Shown: positions 7,401-26,741 of the stretch, piece by piece
Layout of the letters: the number at the start of each line of letters is the position of its first letter
Numbering within the stretch: position 1 is the first letter of the stretch
Position numbers and translations under genes: made by a program
The notes under the pieces: generated by a model
What the model saw: only the letters and a program-made list of their open reading frames with translations
Database searches by the model: none
Told to the model about the DNA's origin: nothing
NCBI RefSeq assembly: GCF_002113885.1
Contig: NW_018405595.1
Span: forward strand, 1,187,123-1,251,122
DNA: 64,000 bases
Direction of reading: 5' to 3'
From: Mizuhopecten yessoensis
Lineage: Eukaryota

Positions 7401-7452
7401 GTTTGATACCAACGTTCTTGCCAACGTGTGCACACGTGTACCCCTCGCATTC

Positions 7453-8351: not shown

Positions 8352-8703
8352 CTCTCACACGTTATCCCTGCCTTCTACCACTCATTTTCTGTACGTTTTT
8401 AGTTACTTTAGTACAGATTATTAAAGAAAAGTTAAAAGCGCTCATGATCTAATGTGTTATCACTGCCATGTACCGTGACGTCATAAATCCTATGTATTAC
8501 AACACATGACATTAACGTTCATAAGCTGCGAAACATGGTGAGCTGTTTATGTGGCACTAAGTTCAACTTTTGCAGACAGAATAAGGTTTATCCCCCCCCC
8601 CCCCCCCAGTTTTTTCCAGTATAAACTGCAAGTCTTTACAGCATGCACTGCAAGTCTGATACAGCAATCGCATGTCGGGTTGATGGATTTATCAAGCGCC
8701 TCT

Positions 8704-8721
8704 GTCCCTACGTGGGCGCCA
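8704..8721 (-). promoter_or_regulatory. Primer-binding site, tRNA-Lys-like
   Basis: TGGCGCCCACGTAGGGAC lies one base after the LTR's terminal CA and matches the tRNA-Lys(UUU) PBS TGGCGCCCGAACAGGGAC at 14/18. Confidence 0.75.
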
Positions 8722-8722
8722 A

Positions 8723-9791
8723 TGAAACAGGGATGGGATTTGGGCAGAGGCGTTACAACAAACACGTTCTTGGTTTCCATTCGTTTAATTATCCCATTTC
8801 TGGACATCAGACACGCTGGATGAATTTACACCCTACAAGAACACAATGACAAACGTATAGGAAACATGCAGTAGATACCCCCTTGTTACTAAAACATTAC
8901 ACTGTACCTATTACAAGGTATCATATCATTATCTGTATAGTTACTTTTATTATTTATCATTAGTCATATTTCATACTTATGATTTATTTCACAATATCTT
9001 TACTGATTTCATTGACTTTATATAACAATGCTCATGGACAAAATAGACTTTATAACCTATTAAACTGGCTAATATATTACACATTACTTAGACCAATAAC
9101 ACATATCATTTGTAATATACATTATTTATATTATATATAACTGTAATGAACTTACTCTTTCAATGTGACAAGGGTTTATAACTGCAGGCGAGTCTGAACA
9201 AATAACCAACGACTCTTTACAGTAACATCGTAGTATGTAATTGATTTAGTCTGATATATTTACATTATCGTTAAAATAGAAATAGAAAGAAGTTATTTCG
9301 AATTTCCAAATATTCACAGAGCATATAGCATGAATATTACTCAGTACATCTATAAAGTACACTATAATAGTTACTCAAAATATCTCATACTAATTTGGAG
9401 AGTTAATACCATCTGTTTTACATTAATTTTGAACATATTAACTCCTACCTTTTCTATATGGTCAACCCCTCCACATGTCTGTCATTCACTCAGGTGAAAT
9501 GCATGGGCAGATAAGAAAGGTCACAGGTAAGTATGGGGTTACAGGTCACAAACAGGTCACAGGTTACAGAACAAAACATAAACAAAAGCACATGGCACTG
9601 AACAACTGACACATGGACAATGACACTGAACAAGACTAGATACTACAAACAATACATGTACACCTGAACAAACAAGACATAATTACATATTAAACTCCAC
9701 TAATATTACTTCATTCATCCACCTTTCAATAAACATTATAAATTAATTACTAACACTATCCATGATACTTGGACAGGCTATCCCTGCCATA
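8723..9791 (-). mobile_element. 5' LTR (1069 bp) of a Gypsy element
   Basis: Imperfect terminal inverted repeats TGAAACAGGGAT / ATCCCTGCCATA and an adjacent PBS. Its first 43 nt are 41/43 identical to the LTR start at 3118-3160. Confidence 0.8.
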
Positions 9792-9900
9792 TGTATATCC
9801 CGAAACTTTGATAATTACTGTCATAATTCCTGCTGAGGATACACATTTATACTGTCTATATTTGTCCATCATCCAATGATGTAATAAGCGACATAACCTT

Positions 9901-9999
9901 ACTACCACACAGGTTTAGGTGACCTATTGACTGACTACCACACAGGTTTAGGTGACCTATTGACTGACTACCACACAGGTTTAGGTGACCTATTGACTG
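9901..9999. repeat. Three perfect tandem copies of a 33-bp unit
   Basis: ACTACCACACAGGTTTAGGTGACCTATTGACTG x3. Confidence 0.95.
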
Positions 10000-10608
10000 T
10001 CTTTCATTGACGTATTTCCCTGGATTCTGGTCTGGTGATATTTTGTTGAATATTTTTTTTCTTCCTTTTCTTGTGGCATTGATTAGCCCAACTACAATAT
10101 TAATCAATTACAGCCTTTTTATGAGGTCAATACATGCGTGGTCATTCTAATCTAGATGTAAGAAAACAAAGGTTTCTTACAATGTTGGAATTTTTATAAT
10201 GTGTAAAATTCTAATAACCTCCCCTTGTTAAAGGGTTATGCCCCCTTGTTTTAAAAAACTCTGTCCCACTCCTTCAGGTATATCACCGATTTTAATTAAA
10301 CTCAGTTTGCAGAGCCATTATAAAAAGGGGATGTGAATAATGCCTATAAATTGGAGCTACCTCCATTATTTATGGAGCTATGCCACTTCATTTAAAATGG
10401 TTTTCAAAAGAACTATTCCTGCAGTTCTTCACACAGGCAGGTAATAAGTCTGCCAATCTGGCAACAGTCTTAGCAATTCAGGGCTAGAAATTAAATTTTA
10501 AAACCGTTAGTCTGTCGTGCTAGTAGTTTCCAATTTTACTAATAGTCCAGGTGTAAATTCCACTTACCCAATATTATTAACATGGTTATACCAAATTTAA
10601 TTATTCCA

Positions 10609-11256
10609 TCAGGCTAGCGTTTTTGCAGCCTCCCCTAACTTCTGATGTGCCACCTGAAAAGACTGGCGCATAGTCTGTTGCGGCCAGCTTACATATTTAC
10701 TTGTACAATAGTCAGGGTCATCTTCCGGTACACCCACCATAATGTCTAATGGACAGTCTGTCTCCCTACCTAACATCAACACATTGGGACTATACCAAGT
10801 ACTAGAGTGTTGTGTAGCTCTATAGGCCATTAAAACATATGGCAACTGATCATCCCAGTCTGTATAGTTCTACTTTACAAAAAAAAAGATAGCATCTGTA
10901 ACAAGGTTCTGTTGAATCGTTCAACTAACCCGTCTGACTGGGGCCAATATGGTGTTGTCCGTGTCTTTTCTATTCCCAGTTTTGCTGCCAAACAAGAAAA
11001 TAACTCGCTCTCAATTTCCTTCCCCATGTCACAATGAATTTGGCGAGGTACCCCAAAACGACTAAAAAATGCAGAACACAGCTTGTCTGCCACAGTAAGG
11101 GCTGTATGATCTGAGACATCATATGCATCAACCCACTTTGTGAAGTAATCACACACTACGATGATATACTGATTGTTGTTATCCGTTTCAGGTAGACCTC
11201 CAAGAATATCAATGGCTATACGATCCATAGGCCGATACACATGAGCTATGGAGGAC
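10609..11256 (-). pseudogene. Gypsy element B, integrase catalytic core (3' truncated)
   Basis: PMDRIAIDILG...CDYFTKW...QIHCDMGKE...TTPYWPQSDGLVERFNRTL, then LMAYRATQHSST. Confidence 0.93.
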
Positions 11257-11452
11257 TTAAAGGTAAACGAAATCCAAAACCAAAAAGTAATTGCCGATTG
11301 TGCCAAAGTGTCATAAAATTATCACTAAAAAAGTAATAAGTGCATTTCGCACATGTTTTGATAGTTATGTAAGTTTATTGCCTTTTTCAAAAAATGCTGT
11401 TTTCAAGTCGATCTCGTAAATCGCGAAGTATTGACCAATTTATCTCCCTTGA

Positions 11453-11477
11453 CTGTGACGTCATATGCGACAAGCGC
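11453..11477 (+). promoter_or_regulatory. Left subterminal repeat with CRE palindrome, upstream of the transposase ATG
   Basis: CTGTGACGTCATATGCGACAAGCGC matches the reverse complement of 19594-19618 at 21/25. Function is inferred. Confidence 0.55.
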
Positions 11478-11534
11478 TTTCGTGGCATAGATTCTGCGCC
11501 TTTTGACAGAGGATGTAAACAAACGCCTGTCAAA

Positions 11535-14500
11535 ATGGTACAATGTGCGGCCATCAACTGTAATAACAGCAGTAATCGCGGACAGAAGATAAGCCTATTT
11601 GCTTTTCCGCGAGATAGAAAACTGGGTAAATTATGGGTAATGAAACTGAAGAGAGGCAATTTTTCTCCAAGCGACCATTCTAGATTGTGCGAGAGGCATT
11701 TTGAAGAGGACTGTTTCACCCAGGATCGTCGTCTGCTTGCATCAATCGGTTTCACACCAGGGCGAAAATCATTAAAACCAGGAGCGATTCCAACAATTTT
11801 TGATTTTTCATCAGCCAACATTCGGAAAAACACTCCAGGCCGGTCAGAAGACAGTTGTCTCGGCCATTTATCAACCCCAAACAAAAATCGGACAAGCACT
11901 GCTATCCAGAAAAGACGATGTCTCGAGGTAAAAAATGATTTTGCATCGATTGTATTTGTAATTGTATTGTATAAATGATATTGCAAAAAGATGCCTGTGC
12001 ACTTACATGCTTATGAAGTAAAACCTATGTTTTTAGTTCCCTCCTTTTTTTGAATTGTTATTTTACATTGTAATGAGTATGCATGTATATCATATAGGAT
12101 ACATGATTACATGTCTCGTATTAAAGTTAGTGATATTTGCTGGTGGAAATTACGTTCCATTTCATTGTTTATTTTATTATTATTTTCGTTTGTAGTTATT
12201 ACCAGACATAACAAGTCACAATAGCCTGACAAGTATGTATGCTGCAAGTACACATGTACAGTACCATCCTAACCAGGTGCATATGGAAACCCATACATCA
12301 GCATTGGATCTGACCAAAACAGCAGACAAATGTGTTGGACCAAATGATCCTCTAGATACATACAATGTTGGCTGTCAAACATCTTACAACCTAACAGTAA
12401 GTATATGAATAATTTTCAATATTTTCTAAGTACATATTCAGCATGAATATTTATATGAGGGTCTTAATTACTTGATCATATGTATGTTTCTAAATATTTG
12501 CTAATACATGTAGATTCATTATGCAGTAAACTATAACAGAAAACAAATAGTTTCACTGAAGTTGAGGATACAATTTTTAAAAAATAGCCCAATGCCCATT
12601 AAAACTTACAGGTGTACATATACATTGGATCTCGAGACTACTGAAATGAAAATGTCTGTTGTAATAATAATGTTAATCAAAATAAATTACAATGTTTAGA
12701 CAGTACAGATCGTTGAAGAGACCGAGGACATACCAGATAAGCATAACTTCTTTTTTTAATTCAGAAACGTCGCCATGTTAGTTTACAGACAAGGATCTCA
12801 GAAATGAAGCCTACAGTGATGTCTTGTGGGGTACAGGCCACATGCCAGACTACGTCTGCATCTGTACAATGTCACAGATACAACCACACCCAGAAGAAAC
12901 ATACAGGAAGTGAATCTGATGATGAAAGTGACATGGATATTTCTCCACCAGACCAGGGCCATGATTCTGAATGGAGTCCATCACAGGAGGACTGTTCAGA
13001 TTTAGAAGGTGATGTCGCACCCTTTTATAAGTTTGACAGTAATGAAACTGACCCAGACAAGGCACACAAGTATGTTGTATTTGAACAATCTTTGTTTGAA
13101 CTTCTTGATATATGTCCTGTCTGCAGGAGGAGAAACTTGCAACACATCAAGACAACAGTTGGAACTTGTGTTTGTATAACAAGTAGTTGTGCCTGTGGAT
13201 TTCTCCGAAAATGGAGGAGCCAGCCATTTTCAAATTCAATGCCCTGGGGAAACTTGGTGATAGCTTGTGGAATATTTTGTAGTGGGAACAGCCCTGTGAA
13301 AACATTTAATTTCATGAGCCATTCAGGTATTTTAGGTCTAAGTCTAACAGCATATAATAAACTCCAAAGGGCCTACATCGTACCTACCACATTATTATGC
13401 TGGCAATTCCAACAGTCTGTGTATCTAAATGATAAAAGGAATAGTGGTAGGTCCTTGAAACTAGGTGGTGATGCCAGATGCAGTTCCCCGGGACACACTG
13501 CGAAATATGGAAGCTACACATTTATGGATGTGGAAACTGCCAAAGTGGTTGATATTCAGCTTGTTCAGGTAATTGAATACTGACCTATTGATGTAGTCAA
13601 GACAAAAATGGTGATAAACAATATTTTGGTGCTTTGTCACTTACATTGATAATATATATAGTAGTCTTAATGCATGTGATTGAACTGTGCTAATTTGTTA
13701 TATAGACTATATATATGTACATGTAGTATAATAATTTCCATATTTCAATTATTTAAAATGCTTTTCATCACATACAAATCACTTGCAAAGCTGCCTTAAA
13801 CTTGCATAATAATTCAATAATTGTACATTATAATCTAATTATGTTAAAAAGAAATATTCTGCTTTTTTCCATATTTTATCCCCATATTAATTAAACTATT
13901 TCAGTCAAATGAAGTGAAAAATTCCAATGCTATGGAACTTGAAGGACTGAAGCGCTGCTTCCAATTCTTGAAGGATGAGGGCATCCCTGTTTCAGATTTG
14001 GTGACCGACAGACATTGTCAAGTGAAGAAATTGATGAAATGTGAACATCCAGATGTAAACCATTGGTTTGATGTTTGGCATGTTGCAAAAGGTAAGCTAT
14101 CTTAACCCTTTCAACACTGTAGACCATAATGGAATCATCCATATAAATACATGGTAGAGTCTACTAAAGTTACATAGGGGTGAGAGGGTTAAATATAATC
14201 ATGCATTTATAGCTCAGATATCAGTATTTTGTCTCTAGGTCTGCTAAAATATTTATAGTTATATATAACAAAATTACTTTCCATCAAATGTTCATGTTCT
14301 ACTATACATTTTTACCCTTGAATTATAGCAGTCAGCTACTACATCAATATTACTATGAATGTATGCCTGTAATGATACATGACTATTACAATTTCATGTA
14401 TTTAATTTACAGGAATGCATTGTCAATTGTTAGGGGAAAATACTTAAAAATATGAAATTGATACATCAGTTTACATCACAGCTCTGTAATATCTACCAAT

Positions 14501-16729
14501 CATATATACTCAGGGGTTTTAAACTTTTATAGGTGTGTACAAGAAGCTAGAAGCTCTGGGGAAGTCAAAAAAATATGCAGTAGCTGGAGAATGGGCCAGA
14601 TCCATCAGTAATCATGTTTACTGGTGTGCTGCCAGCAGTGGAGGTAATGAAGAGCTTGTACGGCAGAAATGGACAAGTATCCTTAACCATGTAGCAAACA
14701 TTCATGAGGGCCATGGGGATCTTTTCCACTCCTGTGAACACGGGAGCATCTCAAGAAAGTGGATCAAACCAGGTTATTATAAGATATGTCTGTCTGAATT
14801 TAGAGATAAATTAGAATTTCAAGCTGGGGATCAAGAGTTCAATAAATTATTTATAAAAAGTTTATTATACTTTTCAGCATGACATTCTTCTTTTCTAATT
14901 ACAGTAGTGCAGAATTCATTTTGAAATTACCATGATACTGTCGATATACAACAATGTAACAAATAAGCATACACCTTTTTCTCTGTTATCCTTTTACTGC
15001 CAGTAAATTTATTTAAGAGTCTTTCAAATCCAGGCACATGCACTGGCCTTGGGTTGAAAGGGAAACTATTTTATGCACATACTGATTTTAAAAGCTGTGC
15101 AGGAAGATACTACACTTGCATGTTATACATAAGTGAAATTATTTATACTTCATGATGTTTTTAATCATTACACATAAAGTATTTATGGTTTATTTATCAC
15201 AGAATTGATTTCTAACCTTTCATTTTAGGAAGCAAAGTATTCCAGGAAATGCAAAGAATTGTATGTCGGAAACTCCTAGTGAAGGATATTGGAAAGTTAT
15301 CTCCAGCACAACAAACATCTTGTTTAGAATCCTTTCACAATGTGGTGAATTATTTTGCGCCAAAAGCTAGCCATTTCTTTTACAATCAGATGAAAGCAAG
15401 GCAAGTATCAGAGATATACAGATTCCACAGTTAAATAAAAGAAATCATCTGTCAGAAATGCATTTGATCACCTTCACATTTGTTCAGACATTTTCACATT
15501 GAGCACAATGAGGTACCTTATTAGTCCCCTACGGGGAGGGGGAGGGACTATATAGTTTTGCGTTGTGTCCGCCCGTCATTCCGTTATCTTGTCCGGGCTC
15601 TATCTCCTACACTACTTGTCACTGTCATACTTTGGGTTTGGGTACGCCTTGGTGAGGCAGTGTATCAAAAGTAGGTCACTCTGACCTACATTTTGACCTT
15701 TGACATGCATCAAAGAAAATGTTTGTCTGGGCTCTATCTCCTACACTACTAGTTGCTGGAGCTTCTATTCACATTTATACCACCAAATGCAATTAAATAA
15801 TGAAACGCTGTAGAATACATAGTGTCACAAGATGTGTCACAAGATGCAATTTAATAGTAAAACGGTATCATTAAACATCTATCAGATTTATTTGCAATAG
15901 TAGCACTTACAGTACTATTCCTTATTGAATACGGTGGGTCTGTCAAACAATCTGTGCATTTTACATTCAGTGGGGGACTATAATTCGACGAATTGTCTTG
16001 TTCAATACATTTTAAAATAAATTTTACACTGACAATGAACTATACTATTTCAGACTCTGCCTGGCAGCCCTGCATTTTAATGCAAATACTTCTCGACAAC
16101 AAGCAACTCTGGAAGACGGGACAGCCAGATACAGAATTGCTTTTCCAAAAGGAAGAAAAGGGGATGCTGTTCCAAAAGAGATCAAAGTAAAACAGAATTT
16201 CGGTATGTTTTGTTTTTCATTTTTCATTTGCATTGAAATATAAAATTAATGTGTAAATTTAATGAAAACATATTGGTGTCCACTGATAGTGTATCTGATG
16301 TAGCATCAACCAATCTTTTACTGTTTTATTTTGAAGAAAAAATTGAACAATGCTGTTGATAAAAACTGTTTACATTGGTGTTCTTGGACTTGTCCTCTTG
16401 CTAAAGTACAGATTTGAAAAATGTAGCAGCAATAAAAAAAGATAGTTTTGATGTAACAGCACATTACGTCTGTATCCTATCAAACTAATATAAATGTTTT
16501 CATTGTTCTTACAGATTACATCACAGAGTTAATGGAGGAGGTAGTAATACGACGGCTCCAGTTTACAACAATTAAACAAGCTGAAGCAGCTCTTGCTCAG
16601 GAAATGGATGCTCCCCCTCCCTCTATTGCCAGTCAACTCCGTGGTGCCATTGGGAATTTTGACAGGAATGTGATCATTCAGAACCACCATCAGAGGTTTA
16701 CCAGTTATGTCAGAAACGAGGATACTTAA
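11535..16729 (+). CDS. Kolobok transposase: THAP zinc finger + DDE, 8 exons, 786 aa, apparently intact
   Basis: Exons 11535-11927, 12196-12396, 12765-13568, 13905-14091, 14533-14772, 15229-15400, 16054-16202, 16515-16729 (2361 nt; phases match, no stops). THAP motif CAAINC...FPRD...W...LCERHF...AIPTIF. Putative catalytic motifs GGDARCSSPGHTAKYG, LVTDRH and TSCLESFHN, plus FDVWH and ARLCLAALHFN. Exon 2 is the least certain. Confidence 0.88.
15519..16002 (+). mobile_element. Non-autonomous Helentron-type element (HINE/DINE-1-like) in transposase intron 6
   Basis: 5' TAGTCCCCT...AGGGACTA palindrome and a GTCCG-type microsatellite remnant. The 3' sub-TIR GGGGACTA is followed by hairpin AATTCG-A-CGAATT and CTTGTT. 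Confidence 0.6.
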
Positions 16730-19572
16730 ATCCAGTGTATTGTTCTGATGGAAATTGTTTCCGTATGGCAGACACAGCACATGCTGGTATGACCCGTCGA
16801 TTTTTCTTTCCAAGAACTTTCCATGTCCACCTGATAAAGCGGCGGTATGCAACAAAACGATACATCCTGAAATGATAAAAATTTCTTGAAGGTCAAGATT
16901 TGTAATGCATGTATTCTCAAATCAGTGCAATTTCAGTGCAGTTAAATATATGTAATAACACTATTCAGTAGTATAAAACATGAATTATGTGTTCTGTATA
17001 GAGTGGGTTAATCAATTGAGGATGTCACTGTGGCATTATTATTTTAATGTCTTATGTATTAAAAGATTGTGCTGAAGAAAAATTTCCATTTTATATAAAT
17101 GTTCTGAATATTGTTTTTTATATTACCAGTACCTGTGAATGTCCTCTTGTGCTCCTGGGCCATGTGTATCGGCATATTCATAATATGATGTTTCCAGTAC
17201 ATGCAAGTTTAGACAATTTGCAATAAACCCTTCATGTTGGGTGATACAGTCAATGTTGGCCAGCTTTTCTTCAAATATGCTCATACCATGACAGCATTTT
17301 CTTTCCTCTTCAGTAGGCATATGAGAACACATGCCACAAGAGCACCTGGAAAGAAAGAAAAAAAGATCAATTTAATTTACATATTATTCACTGATTGATG
17401 GGCAATAGACATAAAAAGTACTTGAAAAATTCTATCAAATAAGTGATACAGTAGTTTTTGTGCATGTACATGCGATAAAAGATGATATGAATGCATCAAT
17501 TGCCTTTCAATCCACTAATTATAAGTTTTAAGGAAAATTTCAATTTTGATATTAGATATTTCAGTACGTAAAAATATTACCTTTTTATGGAATTACAAGA
17601 TATTAGAGAGAGAGAGAAAAAACAGAAATGTGATGCGAGTGAAAGATGGAATGTGGGCATGCATGTTTTATATACACTGTACTTAGATGAATGTTTGTGA
17701 TGACTGTAGCTAAGTGTAATTCAAAGCATGTAGTAAAGGGGGAGGGGGAAAGGAAAGGATTTGTTCCATATTTGGTCTGAAGCATCCTTGGTTGAAGGGG
17801 CAGGGCCCAATAGGGGAAATAGAGGTACATTTTTTATGTAAATCCTCTAAATCGCTACTAGTCATGAATGACTAAATGGTTTTGATCAAATTTGGCCTGG
17901 AACATTATTGGGTGTAGTAGAACCAATGTGTAAATGGAGGGTGTTGGTTCCCTGGGGCCAGAGGGGTGGAGCTCAATAGGGGAAATAGATGTTAATCCTT
18001 AAAGTTGCTACTTGTTGTGAACAACTGTGTGGATTTTGATATCATTTGGTCTGGAGCATTATTGGGTGATCAAGAACCAATGTTATATAAATAGAGGGTT
18101 TGGCTTCCCTGGGGCCTAAAGGGCACGGCCCATTACCGGGAAGTACATTGAATTCTTTGAAATCTTTCTTCTTCAGTAGAAATGTATAGTGTTTTGCCAT
18201 AATCACTGAAATATCCTGGTGAGCGATACAGGCCATCTGGGCCTCTTGTTTGGTACCCTAAACTTTTAATGCAGTTTCAAATAAGCACTACGTGAGGTAT
18301 ACATATTTTTTTGAAACAATTTTTGTTAATCAGCATGAACACTTATAGCAGTTATAGTTATGGTTGCAATTCAATTTTTAAGTTAGGTAAATAAATAAGA
18401 TCTGAATAAATTCAAATATCTTTGCCTACTTTATTATGTTCTGTACATTCAGGACTACTCAAATTGTCAATTTATTGTACATATAATTTTAAACACTTGA
18501 GCATATTATTAAGAGTCATTATCACTCTTCTAAATAATCCCCATGAAATGTATAATTATATATTTTGCCTTCCTAGCTTAATTTTTTCTAAACATTTCAT
18601 AGGAAACAAAACATTTCTTTGGCCAGATGAATCCTTAACAGATCTACACATTTGTGAAGAAGATAATTAAGCCTCCAGTCCAAAGACGGGATTATTTGGT
18701 TTATAAACTGAAATTCTTAATTTTATAGTCTACCGTTGCGTCACATTTATAAAAGAAACATGTATCTGACCAGTGATTATTTATGTTTATATGTTTATTC
18801 AAGTTATTATGATGCCAACCGGCTAATTTGTATTGCATGTAAATCATTGTTGCACGCATGTAGATCATAGGGCAAATACAACATTGTATTGTAATTATTT
18901 ATATTAATACCATCTGCATTTTACATGAAACCTGTGTTAAAATTCATTGTTGCCCAGGAATAAATACAGTGTATACTCAAAAAGAAATGAAATTGTTTCC
19001 TGTTATTTCTGCTGGAGAAGACAGTCTGAATAATATACAGTATTAAAAGTGATTCATTCTGTAAACATTATAATACTTGCGTCGAACTGACAGCAATGCC
19101 GTTTTGCTAACGTTTAAAAAGAAAGTAAGGCAATGCAAATTTCTAAAACAAAGCTGTGGAATGATTTCAAGGATCAGTAGCTTTATGTCAGGCAGGCCCA
19201 TATGCCTCAGCAATATATATACATTTTTTACAATTTGGCCGTTACGATTGGAAAATACGTTTGTTTGAAAAAGAAAGTAACTAGAAGCTAAAAATGATTG
19301 TGACTGCAATTTGACAAACATTTATAGAAATCCGAGTAGATAATTCACAAAGAAACTAACCATTCTCCGACAGGTTGATCGGAAGCCACGGTGTCTGCAT
19401 CACTCTGGTCGCTGAGATTCAGTTCTTCAAAACAATCTGACGAATCTGAGTCGACATGATCGTCATTGTTCGATGTCTCGGGTTCATACATATATGGGTT
19501 GATATTTATAGAGAATGACACCTCTGGGATTTCGTCATGGTCGCTACAATCGGAGTTATATTCGTGCGACAT
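16710..19572 (-). CDS. KolX accessory protein with a P2X7-ballast-like Cys-rich domain, 3 exons, 193 aa
   Basis: Exons 19572-19361, 17345-17133, 16866-16710 (582 nt; GT-AG, both introns phase 2). Acidic N-terminus with PYMYEP, then WCSCGMC...ERKCC...CITQHEGF...RMYRFVAYRRFIRW...LGKKNRRVIPACAVSAIRKQFPSEQYTGFKYPRF*. Confidence 0.88.
17720..18251 (+). mobile_element. 5'-truncated Helentron-type non-autonomous element with about 160-bp internal repeats, in KolX intron 1
   Basis: Three diverged units (GGGGCAGGGCCCAATAGGGGAAATAG at about 17797, 17962, 18120) and a 3' end GGTGAGCGATAC-AGGCC-ATCTG-GGCCT-CTTGTTT. The left boundary is approximate. Confidence 0.6.
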
Positions 19573-19593
19573 TGCGAAGTTTCTGATGGATCG

Positions 19594-19618
19594 GCGATTG
19601 TCATGTATGACGTCACAG
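19594..19618 (-). promoter_or_regulatory. Right subterminal repeat with CRE palindrome, upstream of the KolX ATG
   Basis: The minus strand reads CTGTGACGTCATACATGACAATCGC, mirroring 11453-11477. Confidence 0.55.
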
Positions 19619-19816
19619 CATTTTCGAATTCAAGAACGATAACTCATGCTTGATTTTCACTTGCGATTTCGGTAGAACCTTATATCATTTCACCATTTTA
19701 AAATAATCTACACACCTGTGACGTTTGTAAGGTGTAAAAGCATTAAATTGTATAACCAGGGAACGTTATAATTGTGGAAATACACAAAAACAAACCAGCC
19801 TTTCGTTTACCTTTAA

Positions 19817-20195
19817 GTGCTGATTTACCCTCACCTGGCCCCGGTTTCCTGCGTGCACACTGGTCACACTTCCTACACCACTGTTTGATTGACTCGGTAA
19901 GTCCTTGCAAGAAAAACCTTCGCTTCACGGAAGCAATAGTTTTGTCCCTACCGAGGTGGCCAGAAGTGTGTCCATTGTGTAGCTGGTTCATTCTATCATT
20001 TCTCAAGCAGTATGGTGTGATAATCCGTTGAGTTATATCCCTTGTATCAGTGTCTACATCTGACAAGTACAGAATATCATTGCCCCCTATGCTTATCTTT
20101 TCCCAAAGTTGTACATACACTCTAACTTCATAGGGAAGTGTACTTATTTCTGCCCTAGATGGTTTGTGCGTACATTTTTCTTTCAATAAGATAAA
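19817..20195 (-). pseudogene. Gypsy element B, integrase HHCC zinc-binding segment isolated between two insertions
   Basis: LHNGHTSGHLGRDKT...RRFF...WCRKCDQCARRK. Confidence 0.92.
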
Positions 20196-23100
20196 GGGCA
20201 TGCTTCCAGTAATGTTAATTCTCCATAGGAGCCTGCCCCCGTATAATTTCTTATCTAGCTCAACTACTGTTTTTTTTCTTTTCCGGAGAATAATTTTACA
20301 CCTTTCCGACACCCAGATTTCATAATTTCAGTGAAAATGTATTTTTATAAAGTTGTCAATTTCAGCATCAAAGACATAAGTTCGTAAATAAAAGAAGGTT
20401 ATCTCGAAATTGTAATTCGCAACATAGTATAAATTTCTTTTGATAAATATTTCCAAAACATCGTGTTTATTCATAAAACATAAAAAAAAATATTCTCGGA
20501 TGAAAATGCACTTGCAGAGACACAATTATGAAGAAAAATGCCATAAAATTGCAATTTTCTCCCGTTATATAGTTTTGGATGCAAATTTCCATCAGAAAAT
20601 CGGATAGAGCTTTACTTGTTTCATATGTGTACCAAAAATCAGCTAATTCCATGTGGTGGAACGTTCTCATATCGCCGCCTGAATGTGGTTGTAAATTGAA
20701 AGAAAAGGGGAAATGAGTAACAACCTTGTCTGAAACCCTATTATATAGCTTATTATATACAAACTTTTATATTGAATATCAGAGCGGATATTTTCATGAC
20801 AGTTTTATGATGTGTAACGACTAAATAAACAGTATCGATATAAAGATTTACACTGAGGACACCCTGATACATGAATACTGTTCTATCTCAAGTTGTCCTC
20901 TTCTGAATTTTCTGATCGTGTGGCCTTGTACATTTATCCGTATCTTCTTGTCTTTGTCTATACGTTTACGGAATCATTGACTCGACGCTAGCTATTCTTG
21001 TCTCACTTTCCTTGTTTTATTGTCCCATCTCCAAAGCGTTGTGGCTCTGTCAGGGTTGGGACCCTGACTTGTCTCACTTTCTTTGTGCCTGCCGACCACG
21101 CCACATCGAATAGATAGATTATCCATATGAAATACTTTATTTTGTTCTAAGTAATCAATCAATTCTGCGCTTCTTGGAGGTATTGAATGTGATTTATTAT
21201 ATTGTCTTGTTATTTTGTGTAATTAGTTGTTCGTTATTTATCACACATTTTCGCATAATTGTACCAAACTACTAAGTATTAGCTGTTTACAGCAATCATC
21301 GGTGGCTTGCTATTTTGTTACTTTATCGACGCTTCATAAACCAATCGTTATTGTTTCAAGATGGAGGGTAAATGTGTTGGAGAAGGGTGTCAAGTATACT
21401 TCAAGAAACGTAGTGGCAATAAGAACAGAAGTGCACGCAATGTAAATAGTCCACAATATAAATGGCTCCTAGATACGCTGGTGCAACAAGGATTGATGTC
21501 AGCAAAGGAACAAGCACTTATTTGCCAGAAGTGCTACATGAAGTATCTTCGGAACAAAAATCAGCCTGAACCTGAACCCGAGCAGAACCAGGAAATAGAG
21601 GAAGAAGACGACTCCCCGTCCCATATCCTGCCGTTGCTGACCCTTCATGATCTTTTGAATGGATCATCTTCACACAAAAAATGCTGTCTCTGTCTTGTTA
21701 CCTTTGCAAGAAATGGAACAAAATCATCAGTCTTACCAAAACGTGCAAGACATCACCTGATCTATTCACACAAACTGTGGTGTCCCACCTCATCCCGCGT
21801 CTGCTCCATTCACCTTATTGGTAACGACTTAGATCCGTCTACAGAGGTTGTCCTTGATGGTAGAGGTTCCTTGGAATCTCAGTTACCATCAAAATCGTCC
21901 GAAATCATTAATGACCTCCTAGAGGTGTCGCACGTCCTTTCACAGAACCAGTCTGCGTTTACAATAAGCTTTTCTTCTCTTGATGACTCGGCATGCATGG
22001 CCTGGACAGGTTGGTCCAAAGATCAGTTCCTCGAAATCCACTCGCACTGTTCCCCATATCTTTCATCTGGTATATATACCAAGACTACACACGATGCTCT
22101 ATTACTGTTCTGGGTAAAACTGAAAACCGACATTTCCTGGAGTCAGTGTTCTTCTCTTTTTGGAATTTCCAAGTCAAGTGTGTCCAAAACTTTCCACTCC
22201 ATAGTACAGGCATTAGACACATCGATAGTCCCACAATTTCTAGGTCCGGATCACTTGACAAGAGAACAGTTGCTCGGGCACAATACTGTCTTTTCAGAAG
22301 CATTTTTTGGAGATAAAGCCACTGCCATATTAGATGGCACCTATATTTATATCCAGAAAAGCTCCGACCACAAGCTCCAGAGAATGTCCTACTGTGGCCA
22401 GAAGAAGAGAAACTATCTCAAATTCATGAGCATCGCCTTACCAGATGGCTACATTCTGGACACAGTAGGACCATTCACTGGCAGCGAAAATGATGCTACA
22501 ATTACAAAAAAAGTCATGGACAAGCTAGTTACTTGGCTACAACCAGACGACAACGTTGTCGTTGACCGAGGTTTTAGAGATGTCCTACCAGTTCTCGAAG
22601 CCTCTGGCCTCAATGCTAGCATGCCGTCATACCTGAAACCCGGTCAAAGTCAACATTCTGACGTCCAAGCAAATCTTGACAGAACTATCACCAAATCGAG
22701 GTGGATTGTGGAATCCTATCATGGTCGTCTGAAACACTGGACGTTCTTCCGAACGCAATTGGTGTCTAACAGCTTTATCAATGTCATCGAGGCTTTGCTT
22801 CGAACCGTCACAGCCTGTCTGAATGGTATTAGAGGACCGATCTACCAGAGATCTCCAGAGAGAGATGCCAAAGATAGGCTAATGGCTGAACGTATGAAGG
22901 ACCGTTTGACAACACCGAATGGTTTAGCTCAGAGAGTCAAGACAGATCCGGATCTATCTAGACGGGCAAGGTCCGAGTTTGTCAAGATGGATGCATCTTC
23001 CGTACTGTTTCCCCGTCTCGATCTTGATTACTTGAGAACCATTACGTGTGGAACGTATCAGATATCTCTGGCTCCTGGTTACATCGCCGAACATTTAAGT

Positions 23101-24268
23101 GATGACGGAGACTATGAGGTGTGGCTTTACCAGCACTCCCCAGACCTTCTCCGATGTCAAATACATTCTCGACACAAAAGCCAAACGAAATATAACGTTT
23201 GGATACGGTTCACCGTTTCACCCGATGTTGAGGCCCCAATAAAGGACTACTACTGCCAGTGCCCAGTTGGAGAGAGAACGATGGGAATGTGTGCGCACAT
23301 CTCCAGTATCTTGTACTACCTTGGGTATTACAGGACGCTGGAAAACCCTCGACCATTACAACCACAGGTAAAGAAATTCCGACAAAACTTGAAATAGTTT
23401 TCCATGCGGCAACGGAGTGCATATGTCGAAAGTATGTTTGGGGCTCGATATGAAAGATCCCCGTTACCATGTGACTAACCAAACTTATAAATATAGGTAT
23501 TATACAATCGCCCGTAGCTATGAACACTCCCGTAAATGCGAAAACCAACCAAAATCATAAGGAACACGTTTTGTTTGTTGTTCTGTCTATTTGTCAGCCA
23601 ATGTCTTCAACCACGGGGACTTGTGAAGTAGCCATCTTGGATTTTTTTTATGAAAAAGTGTTTCTCTCACTTTTTTTCATATCTGTGTACATATTCTCAA
23701 CATACCGAGCAAATACTCTCGTTTTTTTGTTAATTATCTAAAGAAAGTCGAAAATCGGCAATTCAACCATAGGCTAATTCAACCCAACATTTGAAAATGT
23801 TCCACCACTTACATTTTGATGATTTTTCCTCTCATCAATAGCATATTACGTACTGTTTAATAGGATAAAAATTGGTTTGCATCCAACGCCCATAAAAGGG
23901 TGTATTCTCTAAAAAACACAGTTTTTGTGTCTAAAATGTTATCATCGAAAATGGCATTTTTGAGATTGTTTCTTCCATAAAACAGCCAAATGGCGCGATG
24001 GAAACATGATTTTTTGTCACAATCATGCCATGAATGTATTCTTTACGGTGACCATCATTTGATTAGATTTTCATTAATATTTTACATAACATGCACATTT
24101 TATCAACACTTAGACAGCTTCTGAAAGGTACAAATTTGAGGAGCCATAAAAAACAAACCAAGTGACCTAAATCTTTATACTTTATAGATTTGTGACCAGA
24201 ACGGCATGGGCAATGCACCACCAACAGGAAATTTGAATCAGAGAAGGGGCCGTTTTGGAAACCGGCCC
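20196..24268 (+). mobile_element. PHIS-superfamily (PIF/Harbinger-ISL2EU-Spy) DNA transposon, 4073 bp, no TSD
   Basis: Flanks read AAA|GGGC...GCCC|TTT. Imperfect TIR GGGCATGCTTCCA vs GGGCCGGTTTCCA (10/13). Removing it restores the Gypsy frame HVSK|FILLKEK. Confidence 0.85.
21361..23397 (+). CDS. Transposase, 678 aa: N-terminal Zn modules, HTH, Harbinger/ISL2EU-like DDE, C-terminal SWIM finger
   Basis: Intact single-exon ORF. HTH: LLLFWVKLKTDISWSQCSSLFGISKSSVSKTF. DDE: ILDGTY...VVDRGF...RWIVESYHGRLK. SWIM: YCQCPVGERTMGMCAH. Confidence 0.92.
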   Translation: MEGKCVGEGCQVYFKKRSGNKNRSARNVNSPQYKWLLDTLVQQGLMSAKEQALICQKCYMKYLRNKNQPEPEPEQNQEIEEEDDSPSHILPLLTLHDLLNGSSSHKKCCLCLVTFARNGTKSSVLPKRARHHLIYSHKLWCPTSSRVCSIHLIGNDLDPSTEVVLDGRGSLESQLPSKSSEIINDLLEVSHVLSQNQSAFTISFSSLDDSACMAWTGWSKDQFLEIHSHCSPYLSSGIYTKTTHDALLLFWVKLKTDISWSQCSSLFGISKSSVSKTFHSIVQALDTSIVPQFLGPDHLTREQLLGHNTVFSEAFFGDKATAILDGTYIYIQKSSDHKLQRMSYCGQKKRNYLKFMSIALPDGYILDTVGPFTGSENDATITKKVMDKLVTWLQPDDNVVVDRGFRDVLPVLEASGLNASMPSYLKPGQSQHSDVQANLDRTITKSRWIVESYHGRLKHWTFFRTQLVSNSFINVIEALLRTVTACLNGIRGPIYQRSPERDAKDRLMAERMKDRLTTPNGLAQRVKTDPDLSRRARSEFVKMDASSVLFPRLDLDYLRTITCGTYQISLAPGYIAEHLSDDGDYEVWLYQHSPDLLRCQIHSRHKSQTKYNVWIRFTVSPDVEAPIKDYYCQCPVGERTMGMCAHISSILYYLGYYRTLENPRPLQPQVKKFRQNLK

Positions 24269-26741
24269 TTTGGATACATGCTCATCTTAACCCTGTAATG
24301 ACTTGATTTTCTCCTCCCCCCAGGATTCTACCCTGTTACTAAATGAATCATCTGAAGATGAGTCACAGAGTGGATTCACCCCAACAGACGTCGATTCATC
24401 TTCATGTGTGTATTCCAAACCAAACTCAGACTCAGGACCCCCCATTTCCTGTTTACAATCTTGACAATCCGGCCTTTTACATGGTCTGGTAGGGACTCTG
24501 GACAACCCATCTGCATTACCATACAGTTCCCCTGGACGGTGTACATTTCAACAATGCTTAACCATCTTGCCAACATTCCCGCAGGATCACTAAAAAATTT
24601 GAACCAAATCAAGAAAGCATGATCTGTCCTGACAGTAAATTTCTGGCCTAATAAAAAAAGTTTGAAATGCCGTAAAAAAGAGTTCTCTGTGGGTTGTACA
24701 GTAATTCTGTTGAGCTTTGTTTAATGTTTTACTAGCGTACGCTATAATGTGTTCTTCCCCATCCTGTACCTGGGATAGCCCAGCTCCCATACCAGAGTTG
24801 CTTGCATCAGTATCAATAATAAATGGGTTGTTTAAGTCTGGATAACTAAGGATTGGGCTGCATGTGAGTAAATCTTTCAGCTCATTAAAAGACTGCTCGC
24901 AGCATTTTGACCACTTAAAAGTTTTGTTTTTTCTTGTCAACTTTATCAAAGGCGCAGTCACTATAGAAAAATTGGGAATAAAACGTCTGTAATACCCTGC
25001 CATGCCTAAACAACTTTTAATTTCCGAAACATTGGTTGGTGAATGCCAATCCAGCACAGCCTTGACCTTAGCAGGATCACAGCTAATCCCAGCTTCCGAT
25101 ACAACATGTCCTAAGTACGAAACTTGGGTCTGAAATAGTTGACACTTCTTAGGTTTTAATTTTAACCCAGCCTCACGTAAGCACTGAAAACAGTCCTAAG
25201 ATTCTTTAATGCCTGATTGAAATTTTTTCCGAACACTATTACATCATCCAAGTAACAGAGACATTTAGACCAGACAATCCCTCCTTTAAAGACGATGGAC
25301 ATAACCCTTGAGAATGTTGCGGGTGCATTTGTTAAGCCAAAGGGCATAACAGTAAACTGGTAGAGACCCTTATGTGTAGAAAATGCTGTTTTAGCCTTGT
25401 CATCTTCACTCATTCCAACTTGCCAGTACCCGCTAGCCAGATCTAGGGTTGAAAACCACTTCGCCCCATGTAACATATCTAGTGTGTCATCAATAAGTGG
25501 CAGAGGATAAGCGTCCTTTTTGGTCACCGCATTAAGTTGACGGTAGTCTACACAAAAACGAATAGCCCCACATTTCTTGGTCACCAAAACAACTGGAGCA
25601 GACCAAGGTCTATTGCTGGGTTCAATCAACCTACTTTCCAACATTTTATCAAGCTCATCCTCAAGCACTTTTTTCGACGCGCTGGTATTTTTATTGGCTC
25701 TGCCTGACCTGTATCTATATGGTGTTCTCCCAAGTCTGTACGGCCCAACTTCCCATCAGGTCCTGCAAAAATATCCTGATATTCCACAAGTAACTGTCTC
25801 ACTTCTGTTTTTTCATTCTCCCTCAACTGAACTGATAACCCCTCTGATAATGGTTCTAATTCATTACTCTCTATCTCTGCTTCATCAACCTGGTATACAT
25901 GTTCTACACTTTCCACTGTAGCTATGTGGGTGTTCTCCTGTAACTTGACAGGTCGCGATGAAAGGTTAAGGACCGACAAGGTTATTTGTTTACCTTTCCT
26001 CGGTCGAACCAACATCCTTGCCAGTAACAACCCTTCACTACTAAACTTCTCAACAGGTTCCACTATTCCCTCCTCACCCGATATATTGCCATCTATGTAA
26101 CCAGGAAAATAACATTCCGTGTTTTCAGGAATGGAGATTGGTTCACTGACCCGTATCCTAGCACAAGTACTGGCGGTGGCCACTACAGGTTGCAAATCAC
26201 ACCTATATTTGCCTAACCTGAGGACTTTTTCTCCAAAGCTTATCTCCCCTTGATGCTTTGTAAGAAAATCAACACCTATGATTCCTCTTAGTCCCTCCAA
26301 CTTAGCCACCACCACTTCCTGTGCAAAATCTGGATCTCCAATCCTAAAATCACAAATGCACTTCCCGTACACCTTCAAATTGTTACCAGATGCAGTTGTT
26401 AACCTTAAATTGCACCTCTGCAACTGGGGCCTATTCTGTGCTGGCATTTGATCATACACATCTGTGGTAACTAGGGTGACTGTTGAACCTGAATCTATAA
26501 GATATCTTGAGGTAACAATGCATACCGAGGAATCTAAATATAAACTAGGTTGTACTGCATTTAACGTAACTACCGGCCCATCTTTATGAAAAGTATCAGA
26601 TTCTGGGGCTGTACTTTTGGGCCCAAGCCCAGCCGTTAAAAGTTTTCCTGACACTGACGACCTTCCTCTCCCCCATTTGTTTTGGTTTTCGGACAATTGT
26701 AGGACAGCTGTCCCTTTTCTCCACACCCATAGCATGGCCAA
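24269..26741 (-). pseudogene. Gypsy element B: gag zinc-knuckle tail, protease, RT, RNase H (decayed, 5' truncated)
   Basis: Knuckle CYGCGEKGQLSYNC; protease LIDSGS and IIGVDFL; RT PWSAPVVLV, FCVDYRQLN, LDLASGYWQ, MPFGL, YLDD; RNase H DTDAS, IAYASKTL, NYCTTHREL. Domain order PR-RT-RH-INT. Confidence 0.95.
26604..26648 (-). other. Probable -1 ribosomal frameshift signal at the gag-pol junction
   Basis: G_GAA_AAC lies just before the gag stop (QENF*) and pol is in the -1 frame. After a 7-nt spacer comes the stem-loop GGCT-GGGC-TTGG-GCCC-AAAAGTAC-AGCC. Confidence 0.6.

What the first reader, a model, noticed from the sequence alone, without database searches (positions are those of the whole stretch)
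16710..19572. Transposon accessory gene encodes a stand-alone P2X7-ballast-like Zn/nucleotide-binding domain
Seen: the spliced 193-aa product has WCxCGxC...CC...CIT...YRFVAYRRFIRW...IPACAVSAIRKQFP...YTGFKYP. Established: the vertebrate P2X7 cytoplasmic ballast has WCQCGxC...LCCR...CITTS...LRHCAYRCYATW...LPSCCRWRIRKEFP...YSGFKSPY, binds two Zn ions and GDP/GTP, and Kolobok elements carry a second gene, KolX. From memory the KolX-ballast homology has been noted before, but I know of no demonstrated function in transposition. Inference: this is a two-component system in which a guanine-nucleotide-sensing module regulates a THAP-DDE transposase. The last exon is invisible in the ORF track.
Basis: partly seen in the sequence, partly recalled or inferred. 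Interest (0 to 1): 0.75.

Follow-up and report, generated by a model that had tools for sequence, protein, structure and literature searches.

The report
Scallop Kolobok transposon's KolX (ballast) gene
This is the second gene (KolX) of an intact, expressed Kolobok cut-and-paste transposon in a scallop; its product has the zinc-binding "ballast" fold of the vertebrate P2X7 receptor tail, a link published in 2022, and what it does for the transposon is still unknown.

Summary
A three-exon minus-strand gene (19572..16710, GT-AG introns of 2015 and 266 nt) encodes 193 aa with every quoted motif. Contigs from four studies lack exactly these two introns. Full-length 189-194-aa scallop homologues carry the same exon 2/3 junction.

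- **Family:** exon 3 alone passes Pfam P2RX7_C (E 1.8e-9). A 13-sequence mollusc profile hits rat P2X7 residues 463-594 (E 1.2e-12). A model of the Pecten homologue's domain superposes on P2X7 472-586 (Z 10.8, 2.9 Å over 106 residues).
- **Element:** the gene lies inside an 8,552-bp element with TTAA duplications and perfect 12-bp inverted ends. It sits tail-to-tail with a THAP-DDE transposase, and the whole element is nested in a Gypsy integrase.
- **Conservation:** the same two-gene layout recurs in six further mollusc loci; a seventh, in Patella, keeps only a THAP remnant. KolX dN/dS is 0.10-0.22.

So this is KolX of a Kol0-type Kolobok. Kojima & Bao (2022) already published the KolX-ballast homology.

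All seven zinc cysteines are present, but only 2 of 5 rat GDP-contact residues are. The "guanine-nucleotide sensor" idea is therefore unsupported.

New here:
- the public 144-aa gene model lacks exon 3;
- a conserved N-terminal motif;
- a conserved TGACGTCA element upstream of both genes.

The scan noted relic copies of this element elsewhere in the same genome.

The parts
11257..11260 (.). Left TTAA target-site duplication
   Evidence: TTAA directly abuts the terminal repeat. The 16-mer made of TTAA plus the terminal repeat occurs exactly twice in the window, where 0.12 is expected by chance.
11261..11272 (+). Left terminal inverted repeat AGGTAAACGAAA (5'-RR terminus)
   Evidence: (I4). A perfect 12-bp match to the right end. 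The same 12-mer bounds the Pecten maximus element L001.
11456..11463 (.). TGACGTCA (CRE-like palindrome) 79 nt upstream of the transposase ATG and 196 nt from the left terminus
   Evidence: (I3). It is conserved upstream of 15 of 16 gene starts in 8 elements from 7 mollusc species.
11535..16190 (+). Multi-exon THAP-DDE (Kolobok-type) transposase gene. The coding ORF segments are about 11535-11935 (THAP), 12804-13575, 13914-14100, 14535-14790, 15249-15410 and 15993-16190. Exact splice sites were not determined.
   Evidence: - Pfam THAP, E 7e-18.
- Every segment is open and 59-92% identical to the Pecten copy.
- Conserved motifs: GGDxRCxSPGHTAKY, TDRH, FDVWH (DxxH), an H..H..C.H finger, and LSPAxQTSxLExFH.
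- dN/dS against L001 is 0.185.
16710..16866 (-). KolX exon 3 (last exon, including the stop at 16712-16710). It encodes the Arg-rich helix, the last zinc cysteine and the YTGFKYP tail.
   Evidence: - Pfam P2RX7_C E 1.8e-9, profile positions 145-192.
- PDB rat P2X7 546-594, E 1.6e-4.
- pI 11.3.
- The spliced joint is seen in 4 of 4 runs.
16867..17132 (-). KolX intron 2 (266 nt, GT..AG)
   Evidence: Contigs skip exactly these 266 nt in X1, X2, X5 and X9.
17133..17345 (-). KolX exon 2, carrying zinc-cysteine clusters 1 and 2 (CxCxxC, CC, CIT)
   Evidence: -.
- 100% identical to the public protein P0001.
- Weak collinear Pfam hit, profile positions 82-126.
- Within the 13-sequence profile it aligns to rat P2X7 from residue 463.
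17346..19360 (-). KolX intron 1 (2015 nt, GT..AG). It contains tandem repeat units of about 154-166 bp at 17770-18083.
   Evidence: Contigs skip exactly 2015 nt in X1, X2 and X9. Contig depth there is about 4,000-13,000.
19361..19572 (-). KolX exon 1: the start codon, a conserved N-terminal motif (IPEVSF...PYMYEP) and an acidic Ser/Asp-rich linker
   Evidence: - (pI 4.05; 20 Asp/Glu and no Lys/Arg).
- The motif is conserved in mollusc homologues.
- It lies outside the Pfam match, which covers residues 49-189 of P0002.
19608..19615 (.). TGACGTCA (CRE-like palindrome) 43 nt upstream of the KolX ATG and 198 nt from the right terminus
   Evidence: (I3).
19801..19812 (-). Right terminal inverted repeat (AGGTAAACGAAA on the minus strand)
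19813..19816 (.). Right TTAA target-site duplication
   Evidence: Contigs of the public runs leave the window's flank exactly at 19816, which points to another insertion site.
10609..11256 (-). Flank: the downstream half of a Gypsy-type integrase ORF, interrupted by the element
   Evidence: ORFs 10609-10845 and 10875-11306. Reading by hand shows the two integrase halves in the same frame on either side of the TTAA.
19817..20312 (-). Flank: the upstream half (zinc-finger part) of the same Gypsy-type integrase ORF
   Evidence: ORF 19743-20312.

Best explanation
The locus is the KolX gene of a structurally intact, autonomous Kol0-type Kolobok DNA transposon. The element is 8,552 bp (window 11261-19812) in what is almost certainly the Yesso scallop genome.

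**Shown**
- The element has TTAA duplications and 12-bp perfect inverted ends.
- It carries two convergent genes read inward from the ends. One is a multi-exon THAP-DDE transposase on the plus strand. The other is the three-exon KolX gene on the minus strand.
- KolX has three parts: a short conserved N-terminal motif, an acidic linker, and a roughly 125-aa cysteine-rich domain.
- That domain is homologous to, and folds like, the P2X7 cytoplasmic ballast. It keeps all seven cysteines of the dinuclear zinc site.
- The gene is spliced as modelled in public runs.
- It travels with the transposase inside the ends in other mollusc species, and it is under purifying selection.

**Inferred (my odds about 0.3-0.4 for this specific role)**
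- KolX is a small zinc-stabilised cofactor that the element needs for its own propagation.
- It is co-expressed with the transposase through the same TGACGTCA element upstream of both genes.
- It acts on or with the transposase, for example in nuclear import (through the KolX-specific basic GKKNRR patch), in assembly at the ends, or in dosage control. This would resemble the second protein of Harbinger elements.
- Its invariant Arg-rich helix (YRxxAYRRFxR) binds a phosphate-bearing ligand, either a nucleotide or nucleic acid.

It is not a P2X receptor, despite the public name 'P2X purinoceptor 7-like'.
For: **Gene model and splicing**
-.

**Family**
- Pfam P2RX7_C: exon 3 E 1.8e-9; homologue P0002 E 4.1e-19; 13 of 13 mollusc homologues match.
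- The profile of these homologues hits rat P2X7 463-594 at E 1.2e-12.

**Fold**
- The model is of the Pecten homologue's domain (pLDDT 71, pTM 0.70).
- Its top 14 PDB hits are all P2X7, with TM 0.57-0.64. The next hit has E above 5.
- Z 10.8, rmsd 2.9 Å over 106 residues, on chain residues 472-586.

**Zinc cysteines**
- The seven zinc cysteines are invariant or nearly so in the domain alignments. They match the three clusters defined in PMC7016195.

**Element ends and Kolobok features**
- Ends.
- TTAA duplication and 5'-RR/YY-3' termini as in PMC9587614. THAP with an AVPTIF-like box and an H2CH finger as in PMC6004289 (compared).

**Linkage and selection**
- KolX plus the convergent transposase recur in L001-L005 and L007. 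TTAA plus AGGT... inverted ends are defined in four of these loci.
- KolX dN/dS is 0.115, 0.218 and 0.096. The transposase gives 0.185 and 0.222.

**Shared promoter motif**
-.

**Literature identity**
Against: - No experiment shows that KolX is needed for transposition or touches the transposase.
- The run type is only guessed as RNA, and contigs cannot give strand, start or level.
- The expressed copy is not the window's copy. It has a different flank beyond 19816 and a G91D difference.
- The fold model is of the Pecten homologue (88-94% identical in the ballast exons), not of the window's joined product. I did not build the joined product.
- Placement in Kol0 rests on KolX presence, not on a phylogeny with reference Kolobok families.
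- TGACGTCA could be a transposase-binding site rather than a promoter element.
Confidence: 0.8

Rival explanations
1. One reading: KolX is a guanine-nucleotide (GDP/GTP) sensor that switches the THAP-DDE transposase on or off according to the cell's nucleotide state.
For: - The fold is the same as the GDP-binding ballast.
- The equivalents of rat R546, A549, Y550 and R578 are kept. R546, A549 and Y550 are invariant and the R578 equivalent is nearly so across mollusc KolX.
- KolX has extra invariant arginines on the same helix.
- Rump et al. model a conserved position for the two arginines in invertebrate domains.
Against: - Three of the five rat GDP contacts are lost: H547 to F, R574 to V, K583 to S (alignment; residue list).
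- The P2X7 pocket also uses helix alpha-9 of the neighbouring subunit. That helix has no counterpart in the match, which starts at residue 463.
- In P2X7 itself no sensing role is known, and GDP appears to be bound in both channel states.
- Nothing here links KolX to transposase activity.
Confidence: 0.15
2. KolX works against the host rather than with the transposase. It would be an anti-silencing or host-factor-binding protein, using its acidic tail and conserved N-terminal motif as a decoy or docking peptide. This would protect the element from repression.
For: - The N-terminal motif plus acidic linker is conserved and lies outside the ballast domain.
- Purifying selection fits any function that benefits the element.
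- The convergent genes have polyA signals that imply overlapping 3' ends. Such overlap would make double-stranded RNA and expose the element to small-RNA silencing.
Against: There is no similarity to any known silencing suppressor. There is no evidence about partners. The overlap of the 3' ends is inferred only from motif positions and unstranded contigs.
Confidence: 0.1
3. The gene is a domesticated host gene (nanor-like or 'P2X7-like', as publicly named) that merely lies next to transposon debris.
For: - Public names are 'P2X purinoceptor 7-like' or 'uncharacterized protein'.
- Domesticated relatives exist in vertebrates: nanor and P2X7 itself.
- The sequence is well conserved between scallop genera.
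Against: - It lies inside the TTAA-flanked inverted ends in the window and in L001, L003, L005 and L007.
- The insertion sites are not orthologous. The window copy is in a Gypsy integrase, and the Pecten copy is inside the span of a VWD gene.
- It always faces a full transposase.
- Contigs show at least one more site in the same species.
Confidence: 0.03
4. KolX is a passenger ORF with no present function.
For: No function has ever been demonstrated for KolX.
Against: - dN/dS is 0.10-0.22 at dS 0.44-1.03, and lowest in the ballast exons.
- All exons are open and splice sites are intact.
- The gene is spliced in four studies.
- It is retained from scallops to clams, mussels, oysters and a limpet while transposase identity falls to 30-45%.
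Confidence: 0.03

Closest known systems
KolX protein of Kol0-lineage Kolobok transposons (type family Kolobok-1_XT; Kojima & Bao 2022, PMC9587614)
   Same: - It is the second gene of a TTAA-targeting Kolobok element with a THAP-DDE transposase.
- It is a small protein with clear similarity to the P2X7 ballast.
- It has seven conserved cysteines for two zinc ions.
   Different: - The paper lists Kol0 in vertebrates, annelids, cnidarians and sponges. These copies are molluscan.
- Features not mentioned in the parts of that paper I read: the three-exon structure, a conserved N-terminal motif (IPEV.F...PYMYEP), the acidic linker, and TGACGTCA upstream of both genes.
- No reference KolX sequence was available for a direct alignment.
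Cytoplasmic ballast / ZCD of vertebrate P2X7 (PDB 6u9v, 8tr5, 9e3m; Pfam PF20478)
   Same: - Homologous domain: profile E 1.2e-12; Z 10.8 over 106 residues.
- It has the same three cysteine clusters.
- The equivalents of R546, A549, Y550, P570, C572, R578, F581 and P582 are kept.
   Different: - It is stand-alone, with no P2X channel, no transmembrane segment and no palmitoylated anchor.
- There are 8 extra residues between CC and CIT.
- H547, R574 and K583 are not kept.
- A basic GKKNRR patch replaces the acidic rat segment 561-566.
- It is encoded by a transposon.
Invertebrate ZCD proteins and vertebrate nanor / nanor-like proteins (Rump et al. 2020, PMC7016195)
   Same: - They are short cytosolic proteins with the ZCD at the C-terminus and a variable N-terminus.
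- Only R546 and R578 of the GDP contacts are conserved outside deuterostomes, which is exactly the pattern seen here.
   Different: Rump et al. treated them as host genes with ancestral synteny. Here the gene is demonstrably inside a mobile element at non-orthologous sites.
Two-gene cut-and-paste transposons such as Harbinger/PIF (transposase plus Myb-like protein)
   Same: The transposon carries a second, non-catalytic protein that is conserved with the transposase. This analogy is the source of the proposed cofactor or nuclear-import role.
   Different: The proteins are unrelated. For Harbinger the role of the second protein has been shown experimentally (my own knowledge, not checked here). 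For KolX nothing has been tested.

Membership tests
Pfam PF20478 P2RX7_C / ZCD (ballast) domain | Score above Pfam's gathering cut-off (23.5 bits) | tested here: met
   - Exon 3 alone scores 38.2 bits, E 1.8e-9.
- Full-length Pecten homologue P0002 scores 69.7 bits, E 4.1e-19, over residues 49-189.
- 13 of 13 mollusc homologues match.
Pfam PF20478 P2RX7_C / ZCD (ballast) domain | Cysteine cluster 1, PxWCxCx2C (PMC7016195) | tested here: met
   The W from the exon 1/2 split codon, then CSCGMC. W and the three cysteines are invariant. The proline sits at -4 from W, not -2.
Pfam PF20478 P2RX7_C / ZCD (ballast) domain | Cysteine cluster 2, LCCRx3GxCITTS/T | tested here: met
   KCCH, then 14 residues, then CITQ. 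All three cysteines and I-T are kept. The spacing is 8 residues longer than in P2X7, matching the 53-residue to 45-position Pfam alignment.
Pfam PF20478 P2RX7_C / ZCD (ballast) domain | Cluster 3, (L/I/V)PSC(C/S)x3IRx2(F/Y)Px5Y(S/T)G | tested here: met
   IPACA-VSA-IR-KQ-FP-SEQ-YTG. The serine is replaced by alanine, and there are 3 residues rather than 5 before Y.
Pfam PF20478 P2RX7_C / ZCD (ballast) domain | Ballast fold | tested here: met
   Tested on the Pecten homologue's domain, not on the window's joined product.
- Model pLDDT 71.4.
- Foldseek's top 14 hits are all P2X7, TM 0.57-0.64.
- Z 10.8, 2.9 Å over 106 residues.
- The full-length model was poor (pLDDT 44.6), but its top 10 hits were still P2X7.
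Pfam PF20478 P2RX7_C / ZCD (ballast) domain | The five rat GDP-contact residues R546, H547, R574, R578, K583 | tested here: not met
   The alignment gives R, F, V, R, S, so 2 of 5 are kept. This is the usual state outside deuterostomes. It is not required for domain membership, but it bears on the nucleotide-binding claim.
Pfam PF20478 P2RX7_C / ZCD (ballast) domain | Actual binding of two zinc ions and of GDP/GTP | not testable with these tools
   This needs recombinant protein.
P2X7 receptor (the public name 'P2X purinoceptor 7-like') | P2X channel body with two transmembrane helices upstream of the ballast | tested here: not met
   The product is 193 aa. Exon 1 has no Pfam hit. The only Pfam family found in 13 homologues is P2RX7_C.
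Kolobok superfamily of DNA transposons | TTAA target-site duplication | tested here: met
   and four other loci. The criterion comes from PMC9587614.
Kolobok superfamily of DNA transposons | Termini 5'-RR ... YY-3' | tested here: met
   5'-AG...CT-3' in the window and in L001, L003, L005 and L007.
Kolobok superfamily of DNA transposons | Transposase with an N-terminal THAP domain including an AVPTIF-type box | tested here: met
   Pfam THAP E 7e-18. GAIPTIF follows the domain. The criterion comes from PMC6004289.
Kolobok superfamily of DNA transposons | DDE core with a C/DxxH motif and an H2CH zinc finger before the last E | tested here: inconclusive
   Candidate motifs are conserved in the relatives that cover each segment, 5-6 per segment: GGDxRC, TDRH, FDVWH, an H..H..C.H finger and LExFH. 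No Kolobok reference profile or sequence was available. Pfam gives only weak Mutator/MULE hits.
Kol0 lineage of Kolobok | Second gene encoding KolX (ballast-like) | tested here: met
   the definition is.
Kol0 lineage of Kolobok | Transposase groups with Kolobok-1_XT and allies in a DDE phylogeny | not tested

The most novel reading that the evidence does not exclude
KolX is the ancestral, free-standing form of the ballast. It is a ligand-gated licensing factor: its zinc-stabilised, Arg-rich pocket binds a guanine nucleotide or another phosphorylated ligand, and its conserved N-terminal peptide docks on the THAP-DDE transposase. Both genes are switched on together by CREB/ATF-type factors through the TGACGTCA element upstream of each gene. 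Transposition would then be tied to a cell-state signal. P2X7 would have inherited a ready-made signalling module.
Probability: 0.12. Interest if true: 0.7.

Novelty: new member of a known kind. Interest (0 to 1): 0.3.

Why it matters
The homology between KolX and the P2X7 ballast, and the proposal that P2X7 acquired its tail from a Kolobok transposon, were published in 2022. The core of the finding is therefore not new.

This locus adds a clean natural example in a bivalve: an intact two-gene element with defined ends, a gene spliced in public data, near-identical copies at other sites, and relatives in six other mollusc species.

That is a practical starting point for an open question, namely what the ballast domain's zinc and nucleotide sites are for. 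In the receptor their function is still called unknown (PMC9859053). A transposition assay with and without KolX would give a simple readout that the receptor does not offer.

Two smaller points follow:
- Public databases call these transposon proteins 'P2X purinoceptor 7-like'.
- The scallop gene model is truncated, which could mislead gene-family counts of purinergic receptors in molluscs.

Tried and rejected
**Searches that gave nothing**
- Exon 2 alone against PDB sequences gave no P2X7 hit, only chance matches at E about 1. The P2X7 match for this part appears only with the 13-sequence profile.
- Exon 1 has no Pfam family.
- tblastn of the three exon peptides found no second KolX copy in the window.

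**Repeats**
- The longest inverted repeats from the repeat finder (I1, I2) are chance. The true ends are I4, and I3 is the subterminal motif.
- My exact-match search for TTAA plus an 11-mer inverted end found no ends in L002, L004 and L006. Those elements' limits are undefined.

**Structure**
- The full-length AlphaFold model with 13 sequences was poor (pLDDT 44.6). I used the domain-only model instead.

**Literature**
- The primary structure paper (McCarthy 2019, PMC7053488) is not held. The GDP and zinc residue lists are taken from Rump 2020 and Durner 2023.

**Steps deliberately not run**
- I did not run the exhaustive HMMER search (search of protein representatives).
- Exons were searched one by one by reference. 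The public proteins P0001 (exons 1-2) and P0002 (the Pecten homologue) stood in for the joined sequence.

**Readings rejected**
- The domesticated host gene and the functionless passenger ORF; see the rival explanations.

Full report
**1. What is in the sequence**

On the minus strand there are three coding pieces with canonical splice signals.
- Exon 1 runs 19572..19361. It has the ATG, 70 codons plus TG, and donor GTTAGT.
- Exon 2 runs 17345..17133, with acceptor TTCCAG and donor GTACTG.
- Exon 3 runs 16866..16710 and ends in a stop.
- The split codons read TGG and AGG, and the sum is 193 codons.

Exon 3 is a 51-aa ORF, below the default ORF listing.

Each was searched by reference.

**2. 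Independent support for the gene model**

Contigs of four public runs from four studies were laid on 16500-19900.
- All four contain a joint that removes exactly the 266-nt intron.
- Three contain a joint that removes exactly the 2015-nt intron. On the minus strand both are GT..AG.
- One contig has intron 2 removed but intron 1 retained. That looks like partly processed RNA rather than a DNA retrocopy.
- Caveats: the run type is only guessed as RNA, and contigs give neither strand nor ends.

The word search found the public protein P0001, an 'uncharacterized protein LOC110448431' of Mizuhopecten yessoensis.
- It is 100% identical over exons 1 and 2.
- It ends in three intron-encoded residues, so the public model (144 aa) lacks exon 3.
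- On this basis I take the window to be Yesso scallop DNA.

Full-length homologues in Pecten maximus (P0002, 193 aa) and Ylistrum balloti (P0003, P0004) carry the same exon 2/3 junction and the exon 3 sequence.

**3. Family and fold**

- Exon 3 alone passes Pfam PF20478 P2RX7_C: 38.2 bits against a cut-off of 23.5, E 1.8e-9.
- Exon 2 gives a weak collinear hit, and exon 1 gives none.
- Exon 3 aligns to rat P2X7 546-594 in the PDB, E 1.6e-4.
- Thirteen mollusc homologues all match the Pfam family.
- Their profile hits rat P2X7 463-594 at E 1.2e-12.

A full-length AlphaFold model was poor. A domain-only model of the Pecten homologue reached pLDDT 71 and pTM 0.70.
- Its 14 best PDB matches are all P2X7, TM 0.57-0.64. 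The next hit is at E above 5.
- The second-look alignment gives Z 10.8 and 2.9 Å over 106 residues, on chain residues 472-586.

**4. Zinc and nucleotide sites**

The three cysteine clusters that define the domain (PMC7016195) are all present.
- The seven cysteines are invariant or nearly so in the mollusc domain alignment.
- An eighth cysteine in exon 2 is not conserved.

Of the five rat GDP contacts, only the R546 and R578 equivalents are kept. H547, R574 and K583 are F, V and S. This is exactly the pattern Rump et al. report outside deuterostomes.

Other observations on this region:
- KolX has further invariant arginines on the same helix.
- A basic GKKNRR patch sits where the rat protein is acidic.
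- Exon 3 has pI 11.3 and exon 1 has pI 4.05.
- In P2X7 the pocket also uses a helix from a neighbouring subunit, and its function is still unknown (PMC9859053).

Zinc binding is therefore well supported by conservation. Guanine-nucleotide binding is possible but unproven, and 'sensing' is speculation.

**5. The element**

The sequence TTAA plus AGGTAAACGAAA occurs exactly twice in the window, in inverted orientation, at 11257-11272 and 19801-19816.
- This bounds an 8,552-bp element.
- The flanking minus-strand ORFs are the two halves of a Gypsy-type integrase, in the same frame on either side of the TTAA. The element is therefore a nested insertion.

Inside the element, the plus strand carries a multi-exon transposase.
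- It has a THAP domain (E 7e-18) with an AVPTIF-like box.
- It has conserved candidate catalytic motifs, including DxxH and an H..H..C.H finger.
- All segments are open.

KolX is convergent with the transposase, and the two stop codons are about 520 bp apart.

These are the published hallmarks of Kolobok. A second gene of the KolX kind defines the Kol0 lineage (PMC9587614; PMC6004289).

**6. Relatives**

I looked up the loci of seven homologues and compared them with the window's exon peptides.
- In Pecten, two Ylistrum loci, Mytilus, Saccostrea and Ruditapes, KolX is followed by the full set of transposase segments in convergent orientation.
- In Patella only a THAP remnant follows.
- Perfect TTAA plus AGGT... 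inverted ends bound four of these elements. The Pecten one has the same 12-mer as the window.
- The insertion sites are not orthologous.
- KolX and transposase identities fall together from locus to locus.
- KolX dN/dS is 0.115 (window against Pecten), 0.218 (against Ylistrum) and 0.096 (Pecten against Ylistrum). It is lowest in the ballast exons.
- The transposase gives 0.185 and 0.222.

KolX is thus a selected, constant component of the element. It is neither a host gene nor a passenger.

**7. Activity**

The contigs that cover the KolX 5' region leave the window's flank exactly at 19816 and continue for 0.9-2.5 kb of unlike sequence.
- They differ from the window at a few positions, including one that changes G91 to D. 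D is the residue in the other scallop copies.
- So at least one further copy, more than 99% identical, sits at another site. It is the copy represented in these runs.
- The scan has also noted relic copies elsewhere in this genome. I did not check them.

**8. New details**

(a) A TGACGTCA palindrome, with conserved flanks, lies upstream of both start codons.
- It is found at 15 of 16 gene starts in eight elements from seven species.
- It lies 173-199 nt from each terminus wherever termini are defined.
- Only 26 occurrences exist in the 218 kb examined.
- It is either a shared CREB/ATF-type promoter element, implying co-expression, or a subterminal transposase site.

(b) The N-terminal motif IPEV.F...PYMYEP is conserved from scallops to a limpet and lies outside the Pfam domain.

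(c) PolyA signal positions suggest overlapping convergent 3' ends. One spliced contig runs at least 580 nt past position 16500, which takes it to about 15920.

**9. Verdict**

- The mechanistic inference of a guanine-nucleotide sensor regulating the transposase has no support beyond fold homology and two conserved arginines.
- My best mechanistic guess is a zinc-stabilised cofactor of the transposase, co-expressed through the shared upstream element. It is an inference, with odds of about one in three.

This is a new, well-preserved member of a known kind.

The two N runs (33761-33806, 58277-58487) were not touched.

Noticed in passing
window 11456-11463 and 19608-19615; L001-L007: A conserved TGACGTCA (CRE-like) palindrome with conserved flanks lies upstream of both the KolX and the transposase start codons. 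It is found at 15 of 16 gene starts in 8 elements from 7 mollusc species, 173-199 nt from each defined terminus. It may be a shared promoter element or a subterminal binding site.
   Followed up: yes
window 19361-19572 (minus strand); alignment A3: KolX has a conserved N-terminal motif (IPEV.F...PYMYEP) followed by an acidic Ser/Asp-rich linker. Both lie outside the Pfam ballast domain. The motif is kept from scallops to Patella, and its partner is unknown.
   Followed up: partly
window 16710-17345; protein P0001: The public Mizuhopecten yessoensis gene model (LOC110448431, 144 aa) reads through the exon 2 donor. It therefore lacks exon 3, which carries the last zinc cysteine and the Arg-rich helix. 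Homologues in other molluscs are named 'P2X purinoceptor 7-like' although they are transposon proteins.
   Followed up: yes
window 15920-16710: The two convergent genes stop about 520 bp apart. PolyA signals on each strand lie beyond each other (plus strand 16431 and 16571; minus strand 16330 and 16263). A spliced contig continues to about 15920. The 3' ends may therefore overlap in antisense.
   Followed up: partly
window 17770-18083 (KolX intron 1): Tandem units of about 154-166 bp show contig depth of about 4,000-13,000 in all four runs, plus a 'goes back 454' joint. This is a high-copy satellite or short repeat inserted in the intron. The window's intron is about 880 nt longer than in the Pecten copy.
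   Followed up: partly
window 21361-23397 (plus strand): A 678-aa single ORF with HTH_Tnp_4, DDE_Tnp_4 (E 1.9e-17) and a weak C-terminal SWIM finger. It is a Harbinger/ISL2EU-like transposase, also nested in the same Gypsy element. The scan has already noted it as s1-510912.
   Followed up: no
window 10609-11256, 19817-20312, 24590-26741 (minus strand): These are pieces of one Gypsy-type LTR retrotransposon: integrase halves, reverse transcriptase, and a protease/gag region. It is interrupted by at least two DNA transposons. The ORFs are still largely open.
   Followed up: no
window 9856-10107: A minus-strand ORF contains three tandem copies of an 11-aa unit (SQSIGHLNLCG), which indicates a 33-bp minisatellite.
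   Followed up: no
L006 (Patella vulgata) 10001-13205: A KolX gene is followed only by a THAP remnant, with no DDE segments detected and no TGACGTCA upstream of KolX. It may be a deleted or domesticating copy.
   Followed up: no
proteins P0007 and P0013: Two public homologues look like faulty models or decaying copies. P0007 has a 19-aa insertion at the exon 2/3 junction, which suggests a retained intron. P0013 loses the conserved C-terminus after the GKKNRK patch.
   Followed up: no
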